The notes: generated by a model from the letters alone, not told the origin. DNA of 64,000 nt from Antechinus flavipes (GCF_016432865.1 NC_067402.1:187736001-187800000), one strand, 5' to 3'. Counted from the stretch's first letter, positions 370-52,836 are shown. Numbers and translations: made by a program.

Positions 370-15457
<15,088 letters not shown>

Positions 15458-15599
15458 TCACTGTGCAGAGGAGGGGGGGAGGGGGGAAGAGAGACAGAGA
15501 AAGAGAGAGAACAGTCAGTGACGTGCACTGTCCCTGTCCCCCTCCCCCACCCACCCCCACCTATTCTTTCCACCCACCACCCCACAACCCCCCCACTCC

Positions 15600-16760
15600 C
15601 TTTGCCACTTGGGCCAGACAGCAAAACCCACTTCAGCTGAACTTCGTTCTTCAGCGTTTCGGGGTGGAAGGGGGAAGGGTCCGGGATCATACTCGCTCCT
15701 CGTAGGGGAGGCTAGGGCCAAAGGTGGGGCAGGGCCAGGAAGGAAGGAGCCCTCCCCTCCTCCAGGACCAAGCGGGCATTGTGGTGGGAGGACAGCTGAG
15801 GGCCATGGGGAAGAAGGGGCCTGCGCTGAGCGGGCTGAAGGGGAGGGCTGCGAAGGGGCGATTCGCGAAGGCAGAAGGTCACTGGGGGGCGGGAAGGGGC
15901 TGCTCCCGGACGCCGGGGAGGGGTCAGTCTCCACAGAGGGCAGCTGATTCCGGGAGCTCTTCAGTTTTTCCAGGGAGCCAAGGGAAGGGGGCGGGTGGAG
16001 TCTCCAGACTTGAGCACGGTCCGGAATGGGGAGCAAGGGGTGGGGTGAGGGTCTGGGGACTAACCTAGGGGAGGGGGCTAAGCCACGTGTCCCGGGGAAC
16101 AAGCTAGCAAAGGGCAGCAGAGGAGTAAGCGCCTGATATAATAAAAAGCCGCCCCTTCCCCACTGTCCTGGAGGGTGGAAGGGCCTCACAGAGGTCCGAG
16201 AAGAAGCCTCGAAGCCCTGAGTGGGGGAGGGCTCTGCTCCCCCCGAGTCCTTAGGGGACCGAGGGGGGGGTAGCCAGCCGGTTTTGAAGGGGCTTTTAGC
16301 GCGAGAGGGGAGGGGACCCCTCGGGGAGTTTCTCAGAAAAGCAGTGTGTGTGTAGGGGTCTTTCCTCGGGGACCCCGCCCCCTCCTCACCCCGGAGCCGC
16401 GGGGTCCAGCTCTATGTAGCTCTCGCTCCCACTCCAGCTCCTCCTCGCCGCGGCCGAAGGGGGGAAAATGGCTCCGGCTCCGGCTTCGCCTCTTAAAGGG
16501 CCCGAAACACCGGCCGGGAAATCCCACAGCCCAAGCCCCGCCCCCCCGCGGACAGCCCATAATAACCCCAACCAACTCCAACCCTCCCCAGTCCCCTTCC
16601 CCCCACCCTCCACCTTCCTCCCTGGGTCTCCCCGGCAACGCCCGCCCCCTCGTCGCCTAGGCAACCACTGGCCCCGCCCCTTCATCGCTCGCGCGCGCGT
16701 GTCACCGGAGCAACCGCCCACCTCCCGGACATCCCATAATACTCGTGGACTCCCCCACTT
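15600..16760 (-). promoter_or_regulatory. CHD4 CpG island / core promoter
   Basis: High GC and CpG density. YY1-like AAAATGGC at about 16466-16473, TTTAAG TATA-like element (minus) at about 16493-16498, GC boxes, three RFX X-box-like sites at 16626-16714. Confidence 0.8.
16390..16490 (-). other. CHD4: CHD4 non-coding exon 1 (5' end approximate), splicing to exon 2 acceptor at 15460
   Basis: Donor CCGGG|GTGAG at 16390/16389 and acceptor GCACAG|TGACTC at 15461/15460. The junction GCGGCTCCGGG-TGACTCGGGCC matches the human CHD4 5'UTR as I recall it. Confidence 0.75.
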
Positions 16761-17527
16761 CCATACACATGTATGCCAGAGTTAGGGACATCCCATAATA
16801 CTCAGTTCCTTTGCAACTCAACCCTTTCTCCCCAAACATCCCATAATAACCATTCTCCTGCCAACTTCCCCACTCTAACCCCCCAGGATTGACATCCCAT
16901 AATGATCCCTCTCACCCCTCCCTCTCCATGGCCATCCCATAATAACCACCCCTCCCAGCACTTCAGCCTTACATCCCATAATACTCACCCCCCATCCCCC
17001 ACAGACATCCCATAATAACCACCCTCAATCCACCCCCAGTTTGACATCCCATAATATCCACCCTCGCCCTCTGCAACAACGGCCATTCAGGGCCCCTTCC
17101 CACACACATCCCATAATAACCAGTCTCCCCCCTTTCTATAAAGACATCCCATAATAACCAGCCCCCTGGTAGCAACCCCCAGCCCCTCCAGGCTAGTATC
17201 CTCTAATAGTCTCACCACCACCATCCCTATCCTTTACACTCACCCTGTAGTCTAGCAGCCCATATAATCACCCCTCCCCTATATGCAGATGTCCCATAAT
17301 GATCAGCACCCTCACTGTTACCCCACAGATGGACATCTAATCACCTCTTCTCTCAAAACATCCCATAATAATACAAGTCTTCCACTCCAATCCAGATATC
17401 CCATAGTAAACACCAGGGGCAGCTGGGCAGCCAGACATCCCATAATAAGCCCAGAAACAACCTAGTGTCACATCCCATAATATCTCGCCCCCCCCCAATA
17501 CCCTTCCAGCCAGGCAGCCCATAATAT
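16551..17527 (+). repeat. Homotypic motif array A: 16 copies of CCCATAAT (consensus ACATCCCATAATA) with non-homologous C-rich spacers
   Basis: Exact cores start at 16556, 16733, 16792, 16840, 16896, 16936, 16975, 17009, 17048, 17110, 17148, 17293, 17362, 17439, 17474, 17518. Degenerate copies at about 17198, 17258, 17332, 17397. Confidence 0.95.
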
Positions 17528-17617
17528 TCACATTCATACCTCCCCCATCTCCAGACACACAGTCCATACTAATCATCGGGAGCAGTGAGGGTGAGGGAGG
17601 CTACCCACACTGTCCAG

Positions 17618-17620
<3 letters not shown>

Positions 17621-17676
<56 letters not shown>
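17621..17676. repeat. (AC)28 microsatellite
   Basis: Direct reading. Confidence 0.95.
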
Positions 17677-17679
<3 letters not shown>

Positions 17680-19399
17680 CCACCCCACCCTGAGCCAGAG
17701 CTATCCTGGAGTGATAGTCTCTGATGGCCTACACCCTGGCCTCCTAACTCTAATCTCCAATACTCAGAAAGAGATCACCTGGAGCCCCACCCGGATATAT
17801 GGAAAATTGGAGACTCCTAGACTCCAAATCCTGGTGAGGCTTACCAACCCATGACACCTTCCCAGGTAGATGAGCCACTTTCATGGAGCTTACTAACTCT
17901 TAGGCTTTCCCATGATATTCACAGGGCCCAATGCAAAGACTATCACATAAAACTCCAGCTGGCTCTCTTCCCTACCCTCAAGCCCTGGGGACTTGTTCCT
18001 CAACATGCCTAAGCAACTCCTATCTCTTATGTGGACTGAGGCCCCTCCATACACGCCCAGGAGTGGGTACTTTACTGCTCACCAGAATCCTACAATGCAC
18101 TAATTAATTCCTCTGACATTATTGTAACATTGTACTAGGCCTGGAAGGATCACCAAAATGCCTTGCTTGCCCTCAAAAAGCTAACAATCTAGCAGAGGAT
18201 GAGAGGTACACAAATAACCATAATGCCTCTGATAAATTTATATCAGATACTATGAGAGTGCAGTACAAAGCACTGTGGGAGTTCTGAGAAATAGATAATT
18301 TCACAAATCAGCTGGGATTTTCAATATCACAAAACCAATGGTAACTAATTCTCAGCAATGATCGCCAATAAGAAGTCCCTGATGGCTGTCATTCAAGGGA
18401 AGTTCCAGAAAGACTTCACCTAGATTCAGGTTAAGGTAGCCTGTTAGTCATATTAAGAAACATTTATGTTCATCTCTTCAGAGTTTCAGAATTTTAAAAT
18501 ATTAACATTTTCCTCAGGATACTCACTAAAATCCCCTAACATGCTATATAGTCCTACTACACACTACATTTTTGATAGTATTCCTTCTTTTTTAATGACT
18601 TTCCCATTATATCTCAAAACGCTTCTTGTCATTCCCATTCAACTAGTCCACCCTCAAACTCTATCTGTCCCTGCTTTTCTAGGATAATCTATGTTATTCT
18701 CCATCCTTTCCTTCACATGCATCACCATCCCATCAAACTTTTTCACCCTAGAGCTACTGTAACAAGTGGCACTTCTACCTACTATATAAATAGCCATCCT
18801 TGTGAACTGATTGTTCCTACCCCCTCTTCCAACCCTGAAAACCATGCTTAGAAAATATCTGAGGCCTCTTCTTCACCCCTACCTAGTTCCTTTTGCTTTT
18901 CAGAGGTCCAACATGCTGTGCTTGGGCTTTTCTTCCATATCTCATCAAATCTTTTTGTTTCTACCTGAAAAACATTAATCCCCAGAGAAATACCCCCAAA
19001 TAAGCAGGATTTGGACTTTTTGTCTTCAGCAAGCTTTCAATAGCTTTGTACCCTAAACCGAGACTTTTCTCTCAATCTCTGTATTGACTTCAGAAAGTCT
19101 GCTCTCCTGAATCTAAACACTGTGGAAGATATTAATGGTTAAACAGAAGCAGGGCTTCTTCCACCAAAATGCATTCTCATAATAGGCTGCTAATTCACCA
19201 TTTTTCCCCTTAAATTCCAGGCTCATTTCCCTATACACACAGGTATTCTTATCTAATCCGAGAATTGATGGTTCAGAAAAACTAGCAAAGATGTATTTTC
19301 CATTCCCACAACTTTCACTTATATCTCTTCTAAGCCCCTCAAACCACAAAGTATCTCCTCCTCTCTCTTGAAGCCAATTTCTCCTTTAGAAAGACAGAG

Positions 19400-20830
19400 C
19401 AGTCACAGAATCTCATAGTTAAAAGGAACCTTCACAGCTCTTTAATCCAATCAGTACTTGAACACAAATCTCCTCTGCATCAGACCTGGCAGATCAATGT
19501 TCTGCTTTTACATGTGAGGGGAAGCTCACTACTTGTCAAGACAGACCATTCCATTTTTACATATCTCTAATTTTTAGGAAGCGTTTTTCTTATAGAGATC
19601 CTAAATCTGTTTCTTTCCAACATGTACCCTTTGCTCCTTCTTCTAGCCTCAGGAGCCAAGCAGAAAAATTTTAATCCCTCTTTCACATGACACCCCAAAA
19701 TAGTTATATCCCATCCTGCCTACTATGTTTTCTATTTTTCAGACTAAATACTGGTAGTTCCTTAAACCAGTTTTCTTATGGCAGTCTCAATATCCAAGTC
19801 ACCCTACTTCAAGTCACTCCTGCTTGTCTAGATCTCATCCAAAAATGCGATGCAAATAGTCCAGAAGTCATCTGACTAGGTCAGAAAGTAGTGCCAACTA
19901 CTTTTTTTTTTTTTTTTCCTGAACACTGTGCCTCTTTAATGCAACAAGGATAGCACCAGTTTTTATGGCTGGCTGTCACACTTATGACTCATATTGAGCT
20001 TGAAGTCCATTAAAACCCCTAGATCTTTTTCTAATAAACTGCTGATTAGCAGGTATTTTTTGTCTTGTACTTGTGAGTTGATTTCTTAAAAACTCAAGTA
20101 TAAGATTTTAGATATATTTCTGTTGAATGGCTGAATAAATTGTGGAACATTAATGTAATGCAATACTATAGTGCAATTAAAACTGAGAAGTGTGAGGAAT
20201 ACAAAGAAATCTGGAAAGATTTTTTTAAATAATGCAAAATGATTTTTAAAAAAGCAGAACCGAAAGAATAGAGTATATACATAATGGCCAGATGATACAT
20301 GAGAAAAGTATATTATGGCAGAAAGCAAAAAGTTATACTATTTTATACAATGAAATTAAATTATTTAAATATTATTAGTCAAAAAGCATATTTAAAGAAT
20401 TGTATTATGCATGGTATTGTTTATAATTATATTTTTAAATATATTCTATTAAATTGTGTCATTAGATTCCACATAATATTCCTATCTATTGAGATATTTT
20501 TGGATCCCAATTGTCATATAATGTGTACTCCTTTCAGCTTTCTATCATCTACAAATTTGATAAGCATGCCACCTATGCCTTTTTTCTAAGTAACTGATAA
20601 AAATATTAAATAGCATAGAGTCAATGACAGATATCTGGGATGCTCCACTAGAGATCTATCTTCAAGTCATTGAATCATTGGGTTGATTGGAACTTTCAAC
20701 TGTGAGATTAGTCATTCAAACAGTATTGAATCTACCTCACCATATTCATATAATCCATATTTTTTCAACTTGTCCACCAAGGTAACATGAGAGACTCTGT
20801 TAAATGCCTTTATCAAAAAACAGTCAGATA
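19400..20830 (-). mobile_element. L3/CR1 LINE fragment, interrupted by an L1-like piece at about 20150-20290
   Basis: CR1-type antisense text (CTCACTAC...CAGACCATTCCATTTT, CAAATTTGATAAGCATGCC, TTGTCCACCAAGGTAACATGAGAGACT). Confidence 0.6.
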
Positions 20831-21034
20831 CTAGGAATATTATCTTCCCCTTATTCTAGATCCCTAAATAACCTTGTTCCTCTCTGGGCTTCAATTTACC
20901 TTCCCCTAATATCATCACACCCATCCATTTCTTCCCATATACCTAAGATACAAGATTGTTCTTTCAGTGTTTAATTCAATTAAAAAGACATTCGTTAAGC
21001 ACTTGGTGCTGAAGATATTTTAAGATTTTTAAGG

Positions 21035-21224
21035 CTTCTTAAGCTTTTCTCATTCATAACCCTTTTTTGCCAGAAAAAATTTTTGCATGACCCCAGGTAC
21101 ATAGGTATATAAAATAAGTATATAAATAAAATATTTAGTGATAATTAATCATAATTTTGTGACCCTCACATTCAGTTTTATAAGATTTCAAATGGGTTCA
21201 CAAACCACAGTTTAAGAAGTTGGG
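21035..21224. mobile_element. hAT/Charlie-like MITE, shorter copy
   Basis: CTTCTTAAGCTTTT...CACAGTTTAAGAAG ends, flanked by possible 8-bp TSD TTTTAAGG (21027-21034 and 21225-21232). Confidence 0.5.
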
Positions 21225-21549
21225 TTTTAAGGTACTATGCTCATTGCTTGGGATAAAAAAAAATTGTCTCTGCACTCAAGAATCATATATCTTCTTAAAA
21301 AGATAAAACAATATGGAAATATTTTTAAAAGAATTGCACATATTTATCCTATATTACATTGCTTACCGTCTTGTAGAGATGGAGAGCTAAAGGAATGAGG
21401 GAGAAAATTTTGGAACAAGGTTTTGCAAAGGTAAATGTTGAAAGTTATCTTTGTGTGTATTTTGAATGTTTTGAAAAAAAGTTTAAAAGATAAAACATAT
21501 ATACATACAAAACATACCAAAAAAATAAATACAGGATAATTTGAAGAGG

Positions 21550-22690
21550 GAAAAAATACCAACTAGAAGGGTGTAAGTTAGAAGAGGCATCAGAGAGCAG
21601 ATGGTACCCTAAGTTGAACCCTGAAGGAAGATGAGCATAAGAAAAAAACCTAAATGAGGAGGAAAAGCATTCTGGGCTTGTGGGATGATTCTGAGAGAGG
21701 GGATAGAAAGCCAAACACAAGGTAATAGTTGTTAGGCTTGTTTGGCTGAAACATAAAGTACATGAAAAGTATTACAAAAAGAGTTTGAAAGTTCAATGGG
21801 ATTCAGAGTGTAGAAAATCTCACATGCCATGCTGAAGAGCTTGTAATTTCATTGCAAAGGAAACAGACCCACTGAAGATATGGTCAGATGTATTTTAGAA
21901 ATATTAACTTGGCAGCTGTGTGAAGAGTGGTTTGAAAAAGACTGGAAGAAGAGATATCAATTTGGAGACTATTGCAGTTGTCCTAGTCAGAGGTAAGAAA
22001 AGCTGAACTAGGGAGGTGGTGGGATGAATGATGAGCAGTGGAATTAATGAGATGTGGAAGCAGAGCTGAAAAACAAAAACAAAAAAACCTTGAGAAATGA
22101 TTGAATATAGAAAGTAAAAGCGAAGGCAGAGTGGAAGATGATTTTTGGGTATTTTGGATATGTGCTACAAAAATTATTAAGTCTGGAAAGAAGAAAATGT
22201 TTGGAGTAGCAGGGAATTTGAGTTGTAGATAGGACATTCAGGTGGTAATACCCAACAGGCAGTTGATGATTCAGGACTAGAATTCAGGGAAGAAATTAGG
22301 TCTGGATATATAGATGTTGGAGTTATCTGTTATACAGATGGCAAGTTACCCATGAGAGAAGATGGAATCTGAAAACTAAGACTATGGAAAGTGAAGGGAA
22401 GATGGCTTAGAATAGAAACCTAGGGACTCCTGCAGTAGGGAGAAAAAGAACAGGAGATACAAATGAGATTGAGAAAGATTAAATTAAACACACAGGAGGA
22501 AAATCAGGAAAGATGGTTGTGTCAGGGAAGCTAAAAAGGGAAGAGTATCAAAAAATGGAGGTCACCAATGCCAGAAATTGCAGAAAGACATCAGTTAAGT
22601 TGATTGAGAGCAGAAATTTCTTGTTCTGTTTGTGTGTCCCTTAGGGCAATATCTTACATATAGTGGATGTTTAATAAATATTGATTGAAC
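21550..22690 (-). mobile_element. L2 LINE fragment
   Basis: Purine-rich antisense L2 pattern (GGATTCAGAGTGTAG, GGACATTCAGGTGG, TTTAATAAATATTGATTGAA). Confidence 0.55.
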
Positions 22691-23199
22691 TTAATGGGGG
22701 GGCACAGAAAAAGTAATCTTGCAGAAAACAATTTCAGTCATGAATTCTAACCAAACCAAGTGATTTTTACCTGGAATGTCCTTGAATTCTTGCTTATGAA
22801 TAAAAAAACTGGCCAGTTTTACTGTACATCTTCCTCTTTCTCACTCATTCCTCATGGATGTTCCTACTCACACACATACATACTGTAAGTAATACAGTAG
22901 TCATTTTATTTTTCTATCTTTTATTAAATATTCATTTCTCTTTAAACAGATCATTGTTGTTTTTTCTCCTACAGTTCTTTTCTGAGTATGCCTCATCTCT
23001 ATCACTATCCTGACCTTGAATTGAAGGAAACCCTGGAAGTATTTATTGATGCAAATAAAAGATACATCTACTTCAATTAGCCAATTCTACCATCATCTCC
23101 TCAATATTTGGTTGACAAGAAATAGAAGCAGAAACTTACCAGTGCCCTGCTACCAATGCCATGCTCAGATATCAAAAGACCCTGGAGGTAGAGTCCCCT

Positions 23200-23440
23200 T
23201 CTTCTTGTTGTTGTCTGACTCTTTGTGACCCTGTGGACAATAATATGCCAGTGCTGCCAGAGGGTTTTCCAGGTAAAGATACTAGAGTCATTTCCCATTT
23301 TCTTCTCCAGTGGATTAAGGCAAATAGAGATTAAGAGATTTACCCAGAGACACACAGAGAATAAGTATCTGAGGCCAGCTTTAAACTCAACTCCTCCTGA
23401 CTCCAGGCCTAGTGCTCTATCTACTGAGCAACCTAGCAGT
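23200..23440 (-). mobile_element. Mar1-like CORE SINE
   Basis: RTE-derived tail (GTCTGACTCTTTGTGACCC, GATACTAGAGTCATTTCCCATTTTCTTCTCCAG) plus tRNA-like head. Confidence 0.65.
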
Positions 23441-24580
23441 CTCTTAGTTATATCGATAGCCTACAGTTGGAAAACTCTCATTTCCTGCTCATATCATGCC
23501 TGTGATTTTGAGCCCCATCTACTATGGAAAAACTCTTCACAGGAGCATACTCCTTGATATTCATTACATTTACATATACTGTTTCCAGCATTATTCAGCA
23601 AATGCCTCTCCTTTGAAGTATCCTCCATCCATTTATATATCCCCCATCCATTTATATAAAACTAAATGCTTATACTTTTTCACTGTCATCTATCAGGCCC
23701 CAGGACATCAACCTTTCTCAAGGAGTTCAATACCTGGTTTAAAATCTTCCTTTCTAAAATGTAGACACCTGCCTTTTTACTTGGGAACCTCCAGATTTAC
23801 ATTGATGTTAACTAGAACACACTAATCCATTCATTTACCTCTTAAATTCCCTGGCCTATGTTCTTAGATCACCTTAGCCACCCACTGGAGTAATCACTTC
23901 TGAGATCTCATGATTAACTATTCTAATTTTTATGATCTTAGACTGAAATTTCTTCACTATGATCATAATCTATCTTTATAGAAGAGAAGAATTATAGAAT
24001 TCCTTTGTCTCACTCCTCCTAAACTTATTTTTCATTCTCATTAAGACTTCAAGACTTTCCCTTGTTACATCAGTCTACTATCCCTTGTTGAGTTTCACTT
24101 TCCTCTCTTGACAGTATTGACCAGAATAATAGCTAGGGTGAGGAACTGAGGTTTTCCAGACATGATGCTTTAAATTCTGACATTTATTTTGAAAAGACAT
24201 GTTTAGGAGTTTTCCCAAACAGCTCAATTATAAGGTGTAAAGAGATTACCTAAATAACTTGACCACAAAGAGTGAAGAAGTTCATCAGTCTATCTGATCA
24301 GGCATTGGCCACTGGATGAAGGTAACTGACTGAACTCAGGCAACTTCCTTTGATTGGCTGCTCTAGGGAACTCAAACTTTGAGTATGAGTTGAGAATATC
24401 TCAGAGAGAATTCCATATTAAGAAATAACTGAATTTTGCATTTAACAAAAATAATTAGATAAATTTGATACTTCCTTTTCCTCAGGTATACCTCAACACC
24501 TCTAATGTGCTCTTTTTCAGCCTAGTTCCATTTTGTTCCCATGGATAGCAGACACCCCTCTCATTCCTTAGAGCAGTTTC

Positions 24581-24746
24581 TTTTTCTTTTCTTTTTTTTT
24601 TTAATAATAGTTTTGTTTTCAAAACACATGCAAAGATAGTTTTCAAATTCATCCTTGCAAGACTCTGTGTTCCAAATTCTTCTCCCTCCCTCCCTACCTC
24701 CTCCCTTTAGACAGCAAGTAATCCAATATAGGTTAAATATGTTAGC
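24581..24746 (-). mobile_element. Short L1 3'-end fragment with poly(T) tail and TSD
   Basis: T-rich tail at 24581-24603 followed by marsupial L1 3'UTR-like sequence. Direct repeat AGCAGTTTC at 24572-24580 and 24747-24755. Confidence 0.7.
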
Positions 24747-25119
24747 AGCAGTTTCAAAGTATTTCTGGGATTCATTCACTAGGATTTGTTTCCTGGGCTC
24801 TGCAATTTGTCATCATTCTTCCCTTGATCAACTGGTTGTGTTTTACTACATGCAAAATAGGTATCTTTTGTGTTGTTAGCCCTAGAAGCCAAAATAGCTA
24901 GTTAACTCTCTGATCTTGGCACGACACTGGTTATCCAATTCAGCTCTACAATGTCTTCTGCCCTTGAATGCTTTGCCTCTTCATCATTTACTACTCACAG
25001 ATTGCTAAACTTTGACTCAGGTTATCCTCACAATTCCCATTGTCTCTAAGTGCTGCTAGAGAATGTTATATGACTATACTGATTAGGTCCTTTTTTATGA
25101 ATACTCTTTCTTAGTGATC

Positions 25120-26920
25120 TCATCAGTTTCCAAATATTACATTGTCATCTCTAAAACAAATGATTTCCAAGTCTATATATCCAGCTCAAATCTCTCTCCT
25201 GAGCTCTAGGCCTGCTTCACCAACTGTTTTTTGGACACTCCCACCTGAATATCCTACCAGAACCTCAAACTCAACATGTTTAAAATGGAATTATCATCCC
25301 CTCTAAACTATTTCCTCTTTAAAACTTTTATTTTTGTTGAAGTTACAATTATCATTCTTTTCTGCTACTTCTCTACTACATAGCCAACTAACTGCCAAGT
25401 CTCCTTGATACTATAGCCATACTTCTATCAGTCCCCTTCTCTACAAACACATTGTCACTATTCTACTTTAGATCCCTATTAACTCTAATTTGACCTACTG
25501 CAAAATAGCTTCCTACATGGAAAATTTTTCTTCTTTCCTATGCTGCTGGTCTCTAAGCAAGCCTGGAACAAATAAAGCAAGTAAGGCAACATCCCAGCTT
25601 CATTTTGCAGACCTTTTCTTGTTGAACATCTTTCATTCAATTCAATAACAACCAACAAATTCTTGTAGGTTCTGATGAAACAAAGACAAAACTGATGTTT
25701 ACCAAATGATGATTACCATTCTCCTTGACCTCTTTATAGCCTTTGACACTGTTGGTCACTACCAATGTTTGATATTCTCTTTTCTTGACCATTTCTCCTC
25801 CTATTTATGTGACCATACCTTCTCTAACTCCTTTGCTGGACCGTCCTTCAGGTACATCCTCTAACCATAGTTGTCTCTCAGAGTTCTTGTCTTGGCTGTC
25901 TTCTTTTCTCCCTCTATGGAACTTTACTTGATGATCTTGTTAGCTTCTATGAATCTAATTACCATCTTTATGCTGATGATTCTCAATCTCCCTATCCTGC
26001 CCTAGACTCTCTGCTGATCTCTGATCTCACGTGTCTATCTGCTTTTCAGACATCTTGAACTGATTGTCAGAGGTTTTAACTCAATGTGTCCAAAATTAAA
26101 TCCATTCTCTTTCCCTCTAAACCTCTTCACCTCTTTTCTAATTCCCCTATTACTGTTGAGGGCAACACTATCTTCCTAATACCTCAGGTTACAATCTTGA
26201 TGTTATTCTCGACTTCTCACTATGTCTCATCCCTCACATCCAACCTGTTGCCAAATCCTCTCAATTTCATCTTTGCAACAACTCTTGAATATGGCCCCTT
26301 CTCTGACACAGCCACTTGTCTAGTACAGAAACTCATTTCCTCACCTCTGGACTACTTCAATAGCCTGTTAGTGTGCTTGCCTTTCTCTCCCCATTCTAAC
26401 CCATTCTACATTCAACCAACAAAGTGATTTTCCTAAATGGAATGTCAGACCATGTCACACACATCCCTCCCCCCACCCTCGACACGCTCAATAAACTCTA
26501 GTTTATTTTAACCTGCCTCTAGGATCAAATGCAAATCCTTTGGCCTTCAATGTTCTTCATAATCTAGTCACCTCCTACTTTCCAGTTTTACCTTCCCATT
26601 TATACTTTTCTGCTCTAGGCATTTCCCCACATCTAAGATGCTCTTCCTCTTCTCCACCTTTTGGCTTCCCTAGTTCACTTCAAGTCCCAATTAAAATCCC
26701 CTTTTCTACAGTAAGCCTTTCCTAATCTCTCAATCCTAGTGCCTTCCCTCCTTAATTATTTCCTATTTATCTTACATATAGCTTGTATGTACATATTTGT
26801 TTGCTTTTTCTTCCATTAGATCTTGAGCTTCTTGAATTCAGGGACAATCTTTTGCTTTTTGTATCTCTAGTACTTAGCACAGTCTACCATATACTGGGTG
26901 TTTAATAAATATCTATTGAC
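25120..26920 (+). mobile_element. L2 LINE fragments
   Basis: CTCAAACTCAACATG, GACCTTTATAGCCTTTGACACTG, and 3' end TTTAATAAATATCTATTGACT. Confidence 0.6.
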
Positions 26921-28441
26921 TAATTGCTCTCAGGAAAATTATATTCTCTTATACATGTTCATGGGTAAGAAAATGCAATATATTTTGAGGAGAAAATTAA
27001 GCACTCACAACTAAAGGGATGAAAAAAGGTTTCAAAGAGATGTTTCCTGAGCTGATGCTTGAAGGTAGAGAAGGAGATTAAGAATAGGAAGTAAGAAGGG
27101 AGTGCATTCTAGAAATGGAGGAAAGAGTTTGCAAAGGAAAAGAGGGAAGAAGAGATGGAATGCCAAGGGGATAGTAGTCTCATTTGGCTTAAATGTAAGA
27201 TATATGAACGTATTTGAAAAGGTGGTGGAGTTGAGGTTATGATGGGCTTTAAACAATAGGCTAAAGAGTTTATATTTATCCTGGAGGCAAGAGAGCTATT
27301 GAGGATTTTTAAGTAGGATAGGATACATGATCAAATGTATGTTTTAAGAGCATTTGGCTATTGTATGACGGATGAATTGTCAACTAGAACAAGGTGGGCC
27401 AATTAACAGGTTTCAATATAGGGTCAAGAAGTATATATTTGTATATGTTGGTTGTTTGTGTGTATATATTGTGTTGTGTTGTGTGATTTCTCTTTATCCC
27501 TCTTGTTTCCTCCTTGTTATCCTAACCCCATGATACTCTTAGGATAAATTATAAATCACCAGTGTGATTGGTCCCTAGAGACAGAGGAGGATAGTCCTCT
27601 GTCTAATATACCCAGTCAAGTAGTAACTCTAGCTGGTTACCTTAGAGTTCTATCTTCTTCCCATAGGACAGAGGAGAATGAAATGAGGAGAACACTCAGA
27701 AAAGGTTGAGAATGGGATCTAGAACTCATATATCCTAATACTCATCTTCTTAATCCTTCTTTTAGTTGAGGATGATAGTCTGTTCATAAGAGGAAAGGAA
27801 TCCAATCATTTTCCCATCTCCCCTACAGTAAACTGACTTGGAAGAGTACCTGTCTCTTTGTACCCTGATGAGGTCATGGGAATGGGCAGTATGCGGCAAC
27901 CAGTTATGCCTGAGGGTAGGGTCAAATGGATAGGTGGCTGACCCAGTCCTAATAATATCGAACTCTTTTCATATAAATTGCAGCTCAGGGAAGATACACA
28001 AGCAGACTACTCCACATACACTCCAAAGTTCATCATTTAGAACCTAGGCCGAGTTGGCGGATGGGAAAGGAGAGAAGGAGCCCATCAGTCTGGGTGCTTT
28101 CCAGAATTATCTACCCAGACTCTTTGCTAAGCTAGGAACAGAATCTAGGTGTCCACGCTTGGACTACATTGGCACGAGACTGGAGGAGATGGGGCTGGAG
28201 AAGGAGGGCACGGTGAGAGTGAGGGGAGTGGGGGAGGGAAAAGGTCCCTTTTTCAAAACTGCCATCTCAAAGGAACTTCTAGATTCCTCTTACCAGGATG
28301 CTAGATCCGACTCTAGGTGTCTCCCCACCCACTCCCCAAATAGTTTTCAACTTCTCGACTCTCTTCTCCTTCCTTCTCTCAATTTCCTCTTTCTTTCCTA
28401 AGCTTCACCTACCCAGAGCAGCCCCACCCAGCTGTGCTGGG

Positions 28442-29375
28442 CACATCCCATAATAGTCAGCCTTCTTTCCCCCCTCCCCTCCAAAAAGAGGCGGTCATCC
28501 CATAATAGCCACCCACAGGAGACATTCCGCGGTGACCGCCCCCTCCCTGCGGAGCTGCCGGGAGCCGCCATCCCATAATAGTTGTCTGCCTGTTTTACTG
28601 GTTACTGCTGTGAAGGGAACCGGAGAGGAAGAGAGGGGAGGGAGAAGCAGCAAGGGTCTCCCCTGGTGGGGGGGTGGGGCAGTAGAAGGCTTAAGCTGAG
28701 GGGTGGTGACAGGTAGAGGGGAATGATGTACAGGTGGTGGGGAGCGACACGCTAGCCCCCATTACTTTGGAATGAGAGCCTCCCCCCCACACCCAAGGTG
28801 GCGACTTGTCAGAGAAACTGCTGGGGCAGTTTAAAAAAGGAAGAAAAACCGAAGTGTTTGGGGAGGGGGGGACTGGTTATCAGGTGTTCCCCCAAGAAGA
28901 CAATGGTTTGAGTGAAAGGGTTGACCTTAGAGAGTGAGGGGGGAGGGGCAAAGAAGAGCTTTCTTATCCTCCCCACTCTGCACCATCATCCCATAATAAT
29001 CCTTCAACCCCACTCCCCCTCCCACACACACACCATCCCATAATATTTCCCAGAGAGGCAGTCCTGCAGTAGGTACAAAGAAGCATCCCATAATAAGCTT
29101 CCCTACCCCACCCATTCCACTCACCAGGCTACCCCCACCTCGGTCACATGCAGTCAGTGCCAACTCCCCCCTGCTCCCCCCTCTGGCCACCAAAGGCCTT
29201 GCCAGCCCATAATACTCCCTCCTCCCCCTTCCTCCCCCCTTCCCACCCCGCACCCCTTCCTCCTGCCTCCAGTTGGATCTGAGCCTCACCAGCCCATAAT
29301 ATTGGCCAGTCTCCTAAGGCTGCTCCAGCCCATAATACTCTCCATGTCTCCTAAGGCCTCTCCATCCCATAACAT
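28442..29375 (+). repeat. Homotypic motif array B: 9 copies of CCCATAAT (consensus CA(T/G)CCCATAATA) plus one CCCATAAC variant
   Basis: Exact cores at 28447, 28499, 28572, 28990, 29037, 29087, 29206, 29293, 29329; variant at 29366. Same strand as array A. Confidence 0.93.
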
Positions 29376-33756: not shown

Positions 33757-34863
33757 TCAGATAGTTGAATCTTTGATGGGTTGAGTGAAGGACTTTTCCA
33801 GAGGTGTAGGTGAGAGCAGTTCACAGTGAGAGGTGTCCTCAACATTAGTGGAGAGAGTACCACTTTCCCGTTGCCTAGGTAGTCCCTGAGATCCATTGGC
33901 AGATCTGACTTTTACCCATCGTGTAGTTCCCAGGTCTCGTAGGGTGTTTCGGAAGCCCTCTGCACTGAAATAGTACACAAGGGGATCTAAGACACAGTTG
34001 GCACTAGCCAACACTACCATCACCACCAACACCTGGCGCACCTTGTCCCGGGCTTCGGAGCTGGCATCTACCAGCTTTCCCCTAAGCAGCCCATACACAG
34101 CCAGGGCCGTATTGTAGGGCACAAAGCACAGGAGGAAAATGACCAGGTTAGCCAGCAGGAGGCGCACCGTTTTCCTGCGTCTTTCACTCCTGGTGGTGCT
34201 GGGCCGGGCCAAGGTCCAGAAGACCCGACTGGAAGAGTAGATCATGGTTATCAAGGGCAGTATGAAACCCAGCCCTTCAGCAAGAAGTACCAGCGGCAGC
34301 AGCTTGCCCTGCCACAACTTCTCACTGAAGCTCTCGAAGCACAGGTTGACAGTGATGTTCTCATAATAGCAAGGTGAGGGAGCATGAACCCGAGCAGCAG
34401 GCACAGCACACACCAGGATCAAAGCCCAGACCCCCAGGCAGAGCAGTCTTGCCACCATAGGCCTGCGTAGGTGGCGGAGCCGCAGCGGGTGGACGATTGC
34501 AACATAACGATCCATATTGATGAGGGCCAAGAAAATGCAGCTGCCGTACATATTCATCTGGAAGGCAGCCCCTGCTGTCTGGCACAGGAGGTCGGGAAGG
34601 GGCCAGTAGTGAAGAGCGTAGTAGGATATCCGCAGGGGCAAGGAAAGGGTAAAAAGCAGATCGCTAGCTGCCAGGTTACACATGTAGACACTGACCACCG
34701 AGTGGACCTGTAGGGCTCGGAGGAACACCCATAGTGCCAAGGCGTTGAGGGGAAGACCAGTGGCAAGCACCAGACTGTAGCCCACCAGGTGCAGGCGGTG
34801 GAAAAGTCGATAGTCAGGACACGCGGGGATATCAGGGCCAGTGGAGGTGGAGTTGGCCGACAT
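33757..34863 (-). CDS. LPAR5: Lysophosphatidic acid receptor 5 (GPR92), 368 aa class A GPCR, single coding exon
   Basis: ORF begins MSANSTS...[19 protein letters not shown]. Seven hydrophobic segments, MDRY and DPLVY motifs, sequence matches LPAR5 and position is syntenic. Likely acceptor TTTCAG|GTCCCC at 34999/34998. Confidence 0.97.

Positions 34864-42436: not shown

Positions 42437-52836
<10,400 letters not shown>

What the first reader, a model, noticed from the sequence alone, without database searches (positions are those of the whole stretch)
16551..17527. Dense same-strand array of ACATCCCATAATA with unique spacers abutting the CHD4 promoter
Seen: 16 exact CCCATAAT cores and about 4 degenerate ones in under 1 kb, all on the plus strand, most 34-77 bp apart. 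The spacers are C-rich and share no obvious homology. A given 8-mer is expected about once per 65 kb per strand, and I saw only a handful of isolated copies elsewhere. A tandem repeat would homogenise whole units; here only about 13 bp is kept, which points to selection on the motif. Inference: a homotypic binding platform for an unidentified DNA- or RNA-binding protein that controls CHD4, the NuRD ATPase, possibly an autoregulatory dosage circuit. The motif only partly resembles the ZNF143 SBS core (TTCCCANAATGC) or HOX/CDX (CCATAAA), and I cannot assign it to a known factor.
Basis: partly seen in the sequence, partly recalled or inferred. Interest (0 to 1): 0.85.

Follow-up and report, generated by a model that had tools for sequence, protein, structure and literature searches.

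The report
ZNF410 binding-site array at CHD4 promoter
The repeated CATCCCATAATA motifs upstream of CHD4 are real and under selection, but they are the marsupial copy of an already published system: the docking array through which the zinc-finger protein ZNF410 switches on its single target gene, CHD4.

Summary
There are 16 exact CCCATAAT cores at 16556-17525, all on the + strand; the window holds 30 against 3.15 expected. The gene is CHD4, on the minus strand. The 12-mer CATCCCATAATA is the published ZNF410 motif. In human and mouse, ZNF410 occupies essentially only two motif clusters at CHD4 (16 promoter and 11 upstream-enhancer motifs) and activates only CHD4. By the published scan rule (up to 2 mismatches) this window has 16 motifs in the promoter cluster and 10 in a second cluster at 28444-29374. 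All 26 point the same way, antisense to CHD4. I fetched LPAR5-CHD4 intergenic DNA from platypus, echidna and dog. Both clusters align motif by motif: 14 of 16 proximal motifs match platypus, and 10 of 10 distal motifs match dog. Motif columns are far better conserved than spacers (0.91 against 0.60, p = 5.5e-18). The neutral decayed-minisatellite rival is therefore rejected, although short local duplications exist. No evidence supports an autoregulatory circuit. The same scan had already noted the second array on this window (s1-204754), and nothing on other DNA. Verdict: already known. Minor additions are monotreme and marsupial orthology, a wider inter-cluster gap in this lineage, and invariant spacer blocks.

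The parts
16553..17526 (+). Proximal (promoter) ZNF410 motif cluster. It has 16 matches to CATCCCATAATA at up to 2 mismatches, 12 of them exact, all on the + strand and so antisense to CHD4. Motif starts: 16553, 16730, 16789, 16837, 16893, 16933, 16972, 17006, 17045, 17107, 17145, 17359, 17397, 17436, 17471, 17515. A 3-mismatch copy sits at 17290.
   Evidence: 14 of 16 motifs align to a platypus motif.
16971..17063 (+). Short run of locally duplicated units inside the proximal cluster (period 34, 2.6 copies, 81% matches). This is the only part that Tandem Repeats Finder calls a tandem repeat.
   Evidence: The repeat families show 34-39 bp spacing and 60-76% identity in the C-rich flanks.
17397..17408 (+). 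Probably dead motif copy, TATCCCATAGTA. It carries A11G in the crystal numbering, inside the key AA dinucleotide.
   Evidence: A11G blocked ZNF410 binding in EMSA (10.1101/2024.02.24.581901). Dog keeps AA at the aligned site.
16440..16549 (-). Conserved CHD4 core-promoter or exon-1 block next to the first motif. It is almost identical to platypus over about 100 bp.
   Evidence: invariant runs at 16440-16484, 16486-16527 and 16535-16549.
15400..16750 (.). CpG-island-like segment over the CHD4 5' end (GC 0.66, CpG observed/expected 0.49, rising to 0.77-0.93 at 16400-16799). The array beyond 16750 is CpG-poor (observed/expected 0.10).
15286..15382 (-). First coding exon of CHD4, starting [20 protein letters not shown]. 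The 3' boundary is approximate.
   Evidence: ORF 15209-15382. Further CHD4 exons are confirmed against PDB 6ryr and Pfam.
28444..28580 (+). Distal cluster, CHD4-side sub-cluster. Three exact motifs lie within 137 bp (starts 28444, 28496, 28569).
   Evidence: They align to three exact motifs in dog, platypus and echidna.
28987..29095 (+). Distal cluster, middle sub-cluster. Three exact motifs (starts 28987, 29034, 29084).
29203..29374 (+). Distal cluster, LPAR5-side sub-cluster. Three CAGCCCATAATA copies (29203, 29290, 29326) and one CATCCCATAACA (29363). The last three are 36-37 bp apart (Tandem Repeats Finder period 37).
   Evidence: The CAG (T4G) variant sits at orthologous positions in dog, platypus and echidna.
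33757..34863 (-). LPAR5 coding sequence, the upstream neighbour. It anchors the conserved gene order and was used to fetch orthologous loci.
   Evidence: E = 1.2e-171 to LPAR5, PDB 20zx. (99% identical to Sarcophilus harrisii LPAR5).

Best explanation
The array at 16553-17526 is the marsupial orthologue of the proximal (promoter) cluster of ZNF410 binding sites at CHD4. The array at 28444-29374 is the orthologue of the distal cluster, called the '-6 kb enhancer' in human. Shown in human and mouse, and inferred here: ZNF410 is a five-finger C2H2 protein. Each molecule reads one ACATCCCATAATA site on double-stranded DNA, with base contacts on ATCCCATAAT. A single site is not enough for productive occupancy. 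Only the dense, co-oriented clusters at CHD4 recruit enough ZNF410, in a cooperative way that is probably nucleosome-dependent, to keep the two elements accessible. The two elements then raise CHD4 transcription additively. Selection therefore acts on each 12-bp site, on site number and on orientation, and the C-rich spacers drift faster. Shown here: the motif's identity, density and orientation, its position next to CHD4, and motif-by-motif orthology with selective motif conservation across monotreme, marsupial and eutherian. Inferred: that a ZNF410 orthologue binds these sites and activates CHD4 in this species.
For: The motif equals the ZNF410 ChIP-seq 12-mer CATCCCATAATA. Human counts are 16 promoter and 11 enhancer motifs, and only three 3-kb windows in that genome hold more than 2. 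Here the counts are 16 and 10 by the up-to-2-mismatch rule of PMC9976917, against 7.4 expected for the whole window. All 26 motifs are on one strand; same orientation is reported for vertebrate CHD4 orthologues, and reversing motif orientation reduced or abolished reporter activity and ZNF410 binding. The conserved block in this window, positions 1-12 at 81-100% with invariant CCCATA, coincides with the crystal base contacts A3-T12. The key AA dinucleotide is intact in 25 of 26 motifs. The gene is CHD4 and the gene order is CHD4-LPAR5-ACRBP-ING4. Orthologous loci: platypus has 10 and 15 motifs, dog has 11 distal motifs plus the start of the proximal cluster, and echidna has 8 distal motifs, all antisense to LPAR5 and CHD4. 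Distal spacings are nearly the same: window 52, 73, 418, 47, 50, 119, 87, 36, 37; dog 59, 73, 467, 46, 51, 119, 39, 86, 36, 37. Identity of motif columns against spacer columns is 0.98/0.70 (dog, distal), 0.95/0.43 (platypus, distal) and 0.91/0.60 (platypus, proximal), with p from 1e-14 to 1e-30. Deleting the human proximal or distal element lowered CHD4 mRNA by about 32% and 20%.
Against: No binding or expression data exist for this species. I could not check that its genome encodes a ZNF410 orthologue with the conserved finger array; the literature says only that ZNF410 is highly conserved among vertebrates. The two clusters are 10.9 kb apart here, against 3.8 kb in dog and 2.7 kb in platypus, so the distal element sits about 12 kb out, not 6 kb. 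One proximal motif carries A11G, which kills binding in vitro. The last distal motif carries T12C at a contacted base. The full proximal cluster could be compared only with platypus. Other marsupial assemblies could not be fetched.
Confidence: 0.92

Rival explanations
1. A neutrally decaying minisatellite. A roughly 38-bp unit was amplified in tandem, and the 12-13 bp core looks conserved only by chance or mutational bias. It has no function.
For: Tandem Repeats Finder calls short local arrays (period 34 at 16971-17063 and period 37 at 29283-29372, 81% matches). The repeat families extend into the flanks at 60-76% identity with recurrent 34-39 bp spacing. Spacers are slightly more alike than shuffles (z = 5.8 and 3.7). 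Some motifs therefore probably arose by local unit duplication.
Against: The excess spacer similarity is tiny (13.4 against 12.0). In cluster 1 adjacent spacers are no more alike than distant ones (13.7 against 13.4). With the core masked, the two clusters share nothing significant with each other or with the rest of the window. The motifs are individually orthologous in platypus, echidna and dog, so the array predates the mammalian radiation. Motif columns are conserved far above spacer columns. The human arrays are functional.
Confidence: 0.02
2. A binding platform for a different factor, such as ZNF143 (SBS core TTCCCANAATGC) or a posterior HOX/CDX protein (CCATAAA), rather than ZNF410.
For: I did not test this against matrices.
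Against: The conserved block is exactly the 12-mer CATCCCATAATA with sharp edges. It matches the ZNF410 ChIP motif, which is nearly identical to the SELEX motif, and the crystal contacts. Position 12 is A in 93% of copies, and the …ATG variant (G at that position) occurs at only two sites. ZNF410 knockout nearly closes the human elements.
Confidence: 0.03
3. The motif works at the RNA level. Upstream antisense or enhancer transcripts read from the + strand would carry repeated CAUCCCAUAAUA, acting as a platform for an RNA-binding protein, or as part of a CHD4 autoregulatory dosage circuit.
For: All motifs lie on one strand, which an RNA-level signal would require. The human elements carry enhancer-RNA and CAGE signals according to 10.1101/2024.02.24.581901.
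Against: Strand uniformity is already explained at the DNA level: reversing motif orientation in reporters reduced or abolished ZNF410 binding and activity. No Rfam family matches the window. No paper read reports RNA binding or CHD4 feedback. ZNF410 dependence accounts for the human elements' accessibility.
Confidence: 0.03

Closest known systems
ZNF410 (Zfp410) homotypic motif clusters at the CHD4 promoter/proximal enhancer and -6 kb distal enhancer (Lan et al. 2020/21; Vinjamur et al. 2020/21; Kaur et al. 2023; bioRxiv 10.1101/2024.02.24.581901)
   Same: The 12-mer is identical. There are two clusters between the CHD4 transcription start and the LPAR5 3' end. Motif numbers are about the same (16 and 10 here, 16 and 11 in human). 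All motifs are co-oriented. Each sub-cluster has at least 3 motifs. The key AA dinucleotide is kept. The distal cluster is orthologous motif by motif with dog, a species in which these clusters were described.
   Different: The species is a dasyurid marsupial, with no binding data. The inter-cluster gap is 10.9 kb, so the distal element lies about 12 kb from the start site, not 6 kb. It has one distal motif fewer than dog: a 39-bp unit is absent. One proximal copy carries A11G and the terminal distal copy carries T12C.
ZFP64 binding-site cluster at the MLL (KMT2A) promoter
   Same: It is a homotypic cluster of sites for one C2H2 zinc-finger protein at the promoter of a chromatin-regulator gene, giving near-dedicated control. 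Both 2020 papers cite it as the nearest analogue.
   Different: The factor, motif and target gene differ. ZFP64 has thousands of additional peaks. This comparison comes from the papers only and was not tested here.
GALNT18 intron 1 cluster of six ZNF410-like motifs (human)
   Same: It is the only other human locus with more than 2 ZNF410 motifs in 3 kb.
   Different: Every copy carries A10C, which abolishes activity. The arrays here keep A10 and A11 in 25 of 26 copies.
ZNF143 SBS / posterior HOX-CDX sites
   Same: They share the sub-string CCCA.AAT or CCATAA.
   Different: The conserved footprint here is the full ZNF410 12-mer. The flanks needed for ZNF143 (…AATGC) or CDX (…ATAAA) are absent.
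Ordinary minisatellite
   Same: There is head-to-tail same-strand repetition, with some young duplicated units (period 34 and 37).
   Different: Unit length is not constant (34-177 bp). Spacers are unrelated. The copies are individually orthologous across mammals and are not homogenised within a species.

Membership tests
ZNF410 homotypic motif cluster at CHD4 | Sites match the ZNF410 motif CATCCCATAATA (ChIP-seq and SELEX; scan rule of up to 2 mismatches) | tested here: met
   16 matches (12 exact) at 16553-17526 and 10 matches (6 exact) at 28444-29374. The window total is 36 against 7.4 expected.
ZNF410 homotypic motif cluster at CHD4 | Density far above the genomic norm (more than 2 motifs per 3 kb, which in human occurs only at CHD4 and GALNT18) | tested here: met
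   The 3-kb bins hold 16 and 10 motifs; all other bins hold 0-3. Uniqueness across this whole genome could not be tested.
ZNF410 homotypic motif cluster at CHD4 | One cluster lies directly upstream of the CHD4 start site and a second lies several kb further upstream | tested here: met
   CHD4 is identified on the minus strand. The first motif is about 5-25 bp from the conserved promoter block. The second cluster lies between CHD4 and LPAR5. The distance is about 12 kb, not 6 kb.
ZNF410 homotypic motif cluster at CHD4 | All motifs are in the same orientation | tested here: met
   26 of 26 are on the + strand. The motifs are also all on one strand, antisense to LPAR5 and CHD4, in platypus, echidna and dog. 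Published.
ZNF410 homotypic motif cluster at CHD4 | Bases contacted by the fingers (A3-T12) and the essential A10-A11 pair are preserved | tested here: met
   The contacted positions are 81-100% conserved among copies. AA is intact in 25 of 26; the exception is 17397.
ZNF410 homotypic motif cluster at CHD4 | Orthology with the clusters described in eutherians | tested here: met
   Distal: 10 of 10 window motifs align to dog motifs, 9 of 10 to platypus. Proximal: 14 of 16 align to platypus and 4 of 5 to the part of the dog cluster captured. The full eutherian proximal cluster was not retrievable.
ZNF410 homotypic motif cluster at CHD4 | The genome encodes a ZNF410 orthologue with the conserved five-finger DNA-binding array | not testable with these tools
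   Only this window is available, and no tool-derived ZNF410 sequence was in hand. [quoted passage not shown]
ZNF410 homotypic motif cluster at CHD4 | ZNF410 occupancy of the arrays, and ZNF410-dependent accessibility and CHD4 expression | not testable with these tools
   This is experimental. It has been shown only in human and mouse cells.
Minisatellite (neutral tandem repeat) | Whole units of constant length are similar to one another | tested here: not met
   Unit lengths range from 34 to 177 bp. Tandem Repeats Finder detects only 2.6 and 2.5 copies locally. Spacer similarity is near the shuffle level.
ZNF143 SBS | Core TTCCCANAATGC, with G-C following AAT | tested here: not met
The base after AAT is A in 93% of copies, and the base before CCC is T preceded by A (…CATCCC…).

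The most novel reading that the evidence does not exclude
The deeply conserved non-motif blocks inside the arrays may be docking sites for the unidentified cofactors that the 2024 preprint invokes to explain cooperative, orientation-dependent ZNF410 binding. They are 28519-28549 GAGACATTCCGCGGTGACCGCCCCCTCCCTG, 29066-29081 GCAGTAGGTACAAAGA and 29173-29191 GCTCCCCCCTCTGGCCACC, all invariant in dasyurid, dog and platypus. On this reading the 'homotypic' cluster is really a fixed heterotypic grammar, kept motif by motif since before monotremes split from the other mammals.
Probability: 0.3. Interest if true: 0.45.

Novelty: already known. Interest (0 to 1): 0.2.

Why it matters
ZNF410-CHD4 is the textbook case of a transcription factor with a single target gene. 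Its specificity is encoded entirely in two dense motif clusters. For biology, this window adds only modest points: (1) both clusters are orthologous motif by motif in a marsupial and in monotremes, including the weaker CAG variant at fixed positions; (2) motif number is held (16 and 10) even though about 7-8 kb more DNA than in dog or platypus separates the clusters in this lineage; (3) several spacer blocks are as conserved as the motifs and could guide a search for ZNF410 cofactors.

Tried and rejected
(1) Neutral minisatellite. I tested it with Tandem Repeats Finder, the repeat finder, spacer-against-shuffle alignment and core-masked BLAST, then with orthologue alignment. It is rejected as the full explanation, though local unit duplications are real.

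(2) Dispersed repeat or segmental duplicate. The masked clusters have no match to each other or to the rest of the window.

(3) RNA family. Rfam at gathering thresholds found nothing in the whole window.

(4) Transposon content of the 10.9-kb inter-cluster interval. Ten ORFs gave no Pfam hit, and only trivial tandem repeats were found. What fills the interval is undetermined.

(5) Other marsupials (brushtail possum, Gracilinanus, bilby) and elephant. The loci were located but no DNA was served because the files are too large.

(6) Sauropsids (turtle, woodpecker, crocodile). There is no cluster within 10 kb downstream of LPAR5, but CHD4 is not within those loci either, so the result is uninformative.

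(7) The supplement of PMC9976917 (Fig. S3C, vertebrate arrays) is not held, so I could not see whether marsupials or monotremes were already shown there.

(8) Mapping the window's sub-clusters onto human 'peak3-5' and the 'switch motifs'. The papers' text does not give coordinates, so I left the assignment open.

Full report
**Observation.** The sequence at 16551-17527 is as described. CCCATAAT occurs 30 times in the window against 3.15 +/- 1.87 expected from dinucleotide-preserving shuffles. Sixteen exact copies lie at 16556-17525, all on the + strand. The shared core is longer than 8 bp. ACATCCCATAATA is exact 11 times, and CATCCCATAATA is exact 12 times and matches 16 times at up to 2 mismatches. 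Several decayed copies sit in the two long gaps. Motif starts are 34-69 bp apart for 14 of 16 intervals. Spacers are C-rich (0.30-0.64 C) with strong strand asymmetry (GC skew -0.58). The same scan noted this separately (s1-204754).

**Surroundings.** Minus-strand ORFs below 16.4 kb translate to CHD4. They match human CHD4 (PDB 6ryr) over residues 178-270 and 418-499, and they carry CHDNT, two PHD fingers, SNF2 and Helicase_C domains. The protein start [20 protein letters not shown] is at 15382. A CpG-island-like segment covers 15.4-16.75 kb. Further upstream, all on the minus strand, lie LPAR5 (33757-34863, E = 1.2e-171 to PDB 20zx), an ACRBP-like exon near 52 kb (identified from the ORF translation by my own recollection of the protein, not searched) and an ING4 exon at 58.0-58.5 kb. 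This gene order is the one I recall for human 12p13.31. The LPAR5 protein is 99% identical to Sarcophilus harrisii LPAR5, so the window comes from a dasyurid marsupial.

**Identity of the motif.** CATCCCATAATA is the 12-nucleotide motif derived from ZNF410 ChIP-seq, almost identical to the SELEX motif (bioRxiv 10.1101/2020.08.31.274324). ZNF410 occupies essentially only CHD4 in human and mouse erythroid cells. [quoted passage not shown] Only three 3-kb windows in the human genome hold more than two motifs (10.1101/2020.08.31.272856). Kaur et al. (PMC9976917) state that densely clustered ZNF410 boxes occur upstream of CHD4 orthologues across vertebrates, 'always in the same orientation'. They scan with up to two mismatches to this 12-mer, and that is the rule I applied. 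It gives 16 and 10 motifs here, all 26 on the + strand, antisense to CHD4.

**Footprint.** Across the 27 copies, positions 1-12 are 81-100% conserved and CCCATA is invariant. Flanking positions fall to 33-59%. The crystal structure places base-specific contacts on A3-T12 of ACATCCCATAAT, and that stretch coincides with the conserved block. The 2024 preprint (10.1101/2024.02.24.581901) shows that A10G or A11G abolishes binding and that A13G is tolerated. Here the AA pair is intact in 25 of 26 motifs. The exception, 17397 TATCCCATAGTA, carries A11G and is probably a dead site. The …ATG variants carry the tolerated A13G.

Tandem Repeats Finder calls only two short local arrays: period 34 with 2.6 copies, and period 37 with 2.5 copies. 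Spacers are only slightly more similar than shuffles (13.4 against 12.0). In cluster 1, neighbouring spacers are no more alike than distant ones. The repeat families extend 60-76% into the C-rich flanks with recurrent 34-39 bp spacing. With the core masked, the clusters match neither each other nor the rest of the window. Some sites therefore probably arose by local unit duplication, but the array is not a homogenised or simply decaying repeat.

**Orthologues.** LPAR5 is a single-exon gene about 4.4 kb from the distal cluster, so I fetched LPAR5 loci with 10-kb flanks.
- Platypus has 10 distal and 15 proximal motifs.
- Dog has 11 distal motifs plus the first 5 of the proximal cluster, which is cut by the locus end.
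- Echidna has 8 distal motifs.
- In all three species every motif in the clusters is antisense to LPAR5 and CHD4.

Distal spacings read from the CHD4 side are:
- window: 52, 73, 418, 47, 50, 119, 87, 36, 37
- dog: 59, 73, 467, 46, 51, 119, 39, 86, 36, 37
- platypus: 49, 83, 293, 51, 117, 36, 38, 33, 34

The alignments show motif-by-motif orthology, including the CAGCCCATAATA variant at fixed positions. Identity in motif columns against spacer columns is as follows (Fisher p from 1e-14 to 1e-30 for these three comparisons):

| Comparison | Motif columns | Spacer columns |
|---|---|---|
| Distal, window vs dog | 0.98 | 0.70 |
| Distal, window vs platypus | 0.95 | 0.43 |
| Proximal, window vs platypus | 0.91 | 0.60 |

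Fourteen of 16 proximal motifs, and 10 of 10 (dog) or 9 of 10 (platypus) distal motifs, have an aligned counterpart. The arrays therefore predate the split of monotremes from other mammals and are under site-specific purifying selection. Turtle, woodpecker and crocodile loci did not reach CHD4 within 10 kb and are uninformative.

**Mechanism.** The following is established in human cells. ZNF410 loss nearly closes both elements. Deleting the proximal or distal element lowers CHD4 mRNA by about 32% and 20%, additively. Disrupting a single motif has minimal effect. Binding within a sub-cluster is cooperative in cells, and reversing motif orientation reduces or abolishes binding and activity. Carrying this over to the marsupial locus is an inference, supported by the conservation above. 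An RNA-level reading is not needed and has no support.

**Differences and minor new points.**
- The clusters are 10.9 kb apart here, against 3.8 kb in dog and 2.7 kb in platypus. The interval is AT-rich, with no recognisable transposon ORFs.
- The dasyurid lacks one 39-bp distal unit that dog, platypus and echidna have.
- The last distal motif carries T12C, where dog and platypus keep T.
- Several non-motif blocks are invariant in dasyurid, dog and platypus. They are candidates for the cofactors postulated in the 2024 preprint.

**Verdict.** The finding is already known, and interest is low beyond the modest comparative additions.

Noticed in passing
window 28444-29374: This is a second co-oriented cluster of 10 ZNF410 motifs in three sub-clusters (3 + 3 + 4), split by a G-rich 406-bp spacer. 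It is the orthologue of the human '-6 kb' distal enhancer and was already flagged by the scan as s1-204754.
   Followed up: yes
window 28519-28549, 29066-29081, 29173-29191: These non-motif blocks are invariant in dasyurid, dog and platypus and sit inside the distal cluster: GAGACATTCCGCGGTGACCGCCCCCTCCCTG, GCAGTAGGTACAAAGA and GCTCCCCCCTCTGGCCACC. The first contains CATTCC, which from memory resembles a TEAD/MCAT core. They are candidate cofactor sites.
   Followed up: partly
window 17527-28443: The inter-cluster interval is 10.9 kb here, against 3.8 kb in dog (L002) and 2.7 kb in platypus (L001). It is AT-rich (GC 0.24-0.43). No Pfam hit was found in its ORFs, so the origin of the extra 7-8 kb is undetermined.
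   Followed up: partly
window 17397-17408 and 29363-29374: These are lineage-specific lesions in otherwise conserved sites. TATCCCATAGTA carries A11G, which blocks binding in published EMSA. CATCCCATAACA carries T12C at a base contacted on both strands, whereas dog and platypus keep the consensus at that last distal motif.
   Followed up: partly
window 46980-46997: An isolated CAGCCCATAATATTGGCC lies between LPAR5 and ACRBP. It shares an exact 18-mer with the distal-cluster copy at 29290 and has no neighbouring motifs. It may be chance or a relic.
   Followed up: no
window 12831-12842: A weak single motif, CATCCCACAATG (2 mismatches), lies in what appears to be CHD4 intron 2. Vinjamur et al. 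report a weak (about 10-fold) ZNF410 peak in human CHD4 intron 2.
   Followed up: no
window 16440-16549: The CHD4 core promoter or exon-1 block is almost identical to platypus over about 100 bp. On the CHD4 strand it contains GGGATTTCCC and GCCATTTT, which from memory resemble NF-kappaB and YY1 sites.
   Followed up: no
window 16500-17999: The array spacers show a strong C-over-G strand asymmetry (GC skew -0.58, almost no G on the + strand). The same is seen in the platypus array. No explanation was found.
   Followed up: no
window 17621-17676: A perfect (AC)28 microsatellite lies about 95 bp beyond the last motif of the proximal array.
   Followed up: no
L003, L005, L006 (turtle, woodpecker, crocodile LPAR5 loci): No ZNF410 motif cluster and no CHD4 first coding exon lie within 10 kb downstream of LPAR5. 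Either the intergenic distance or the gene order differs from mammals.
   Followed up: no
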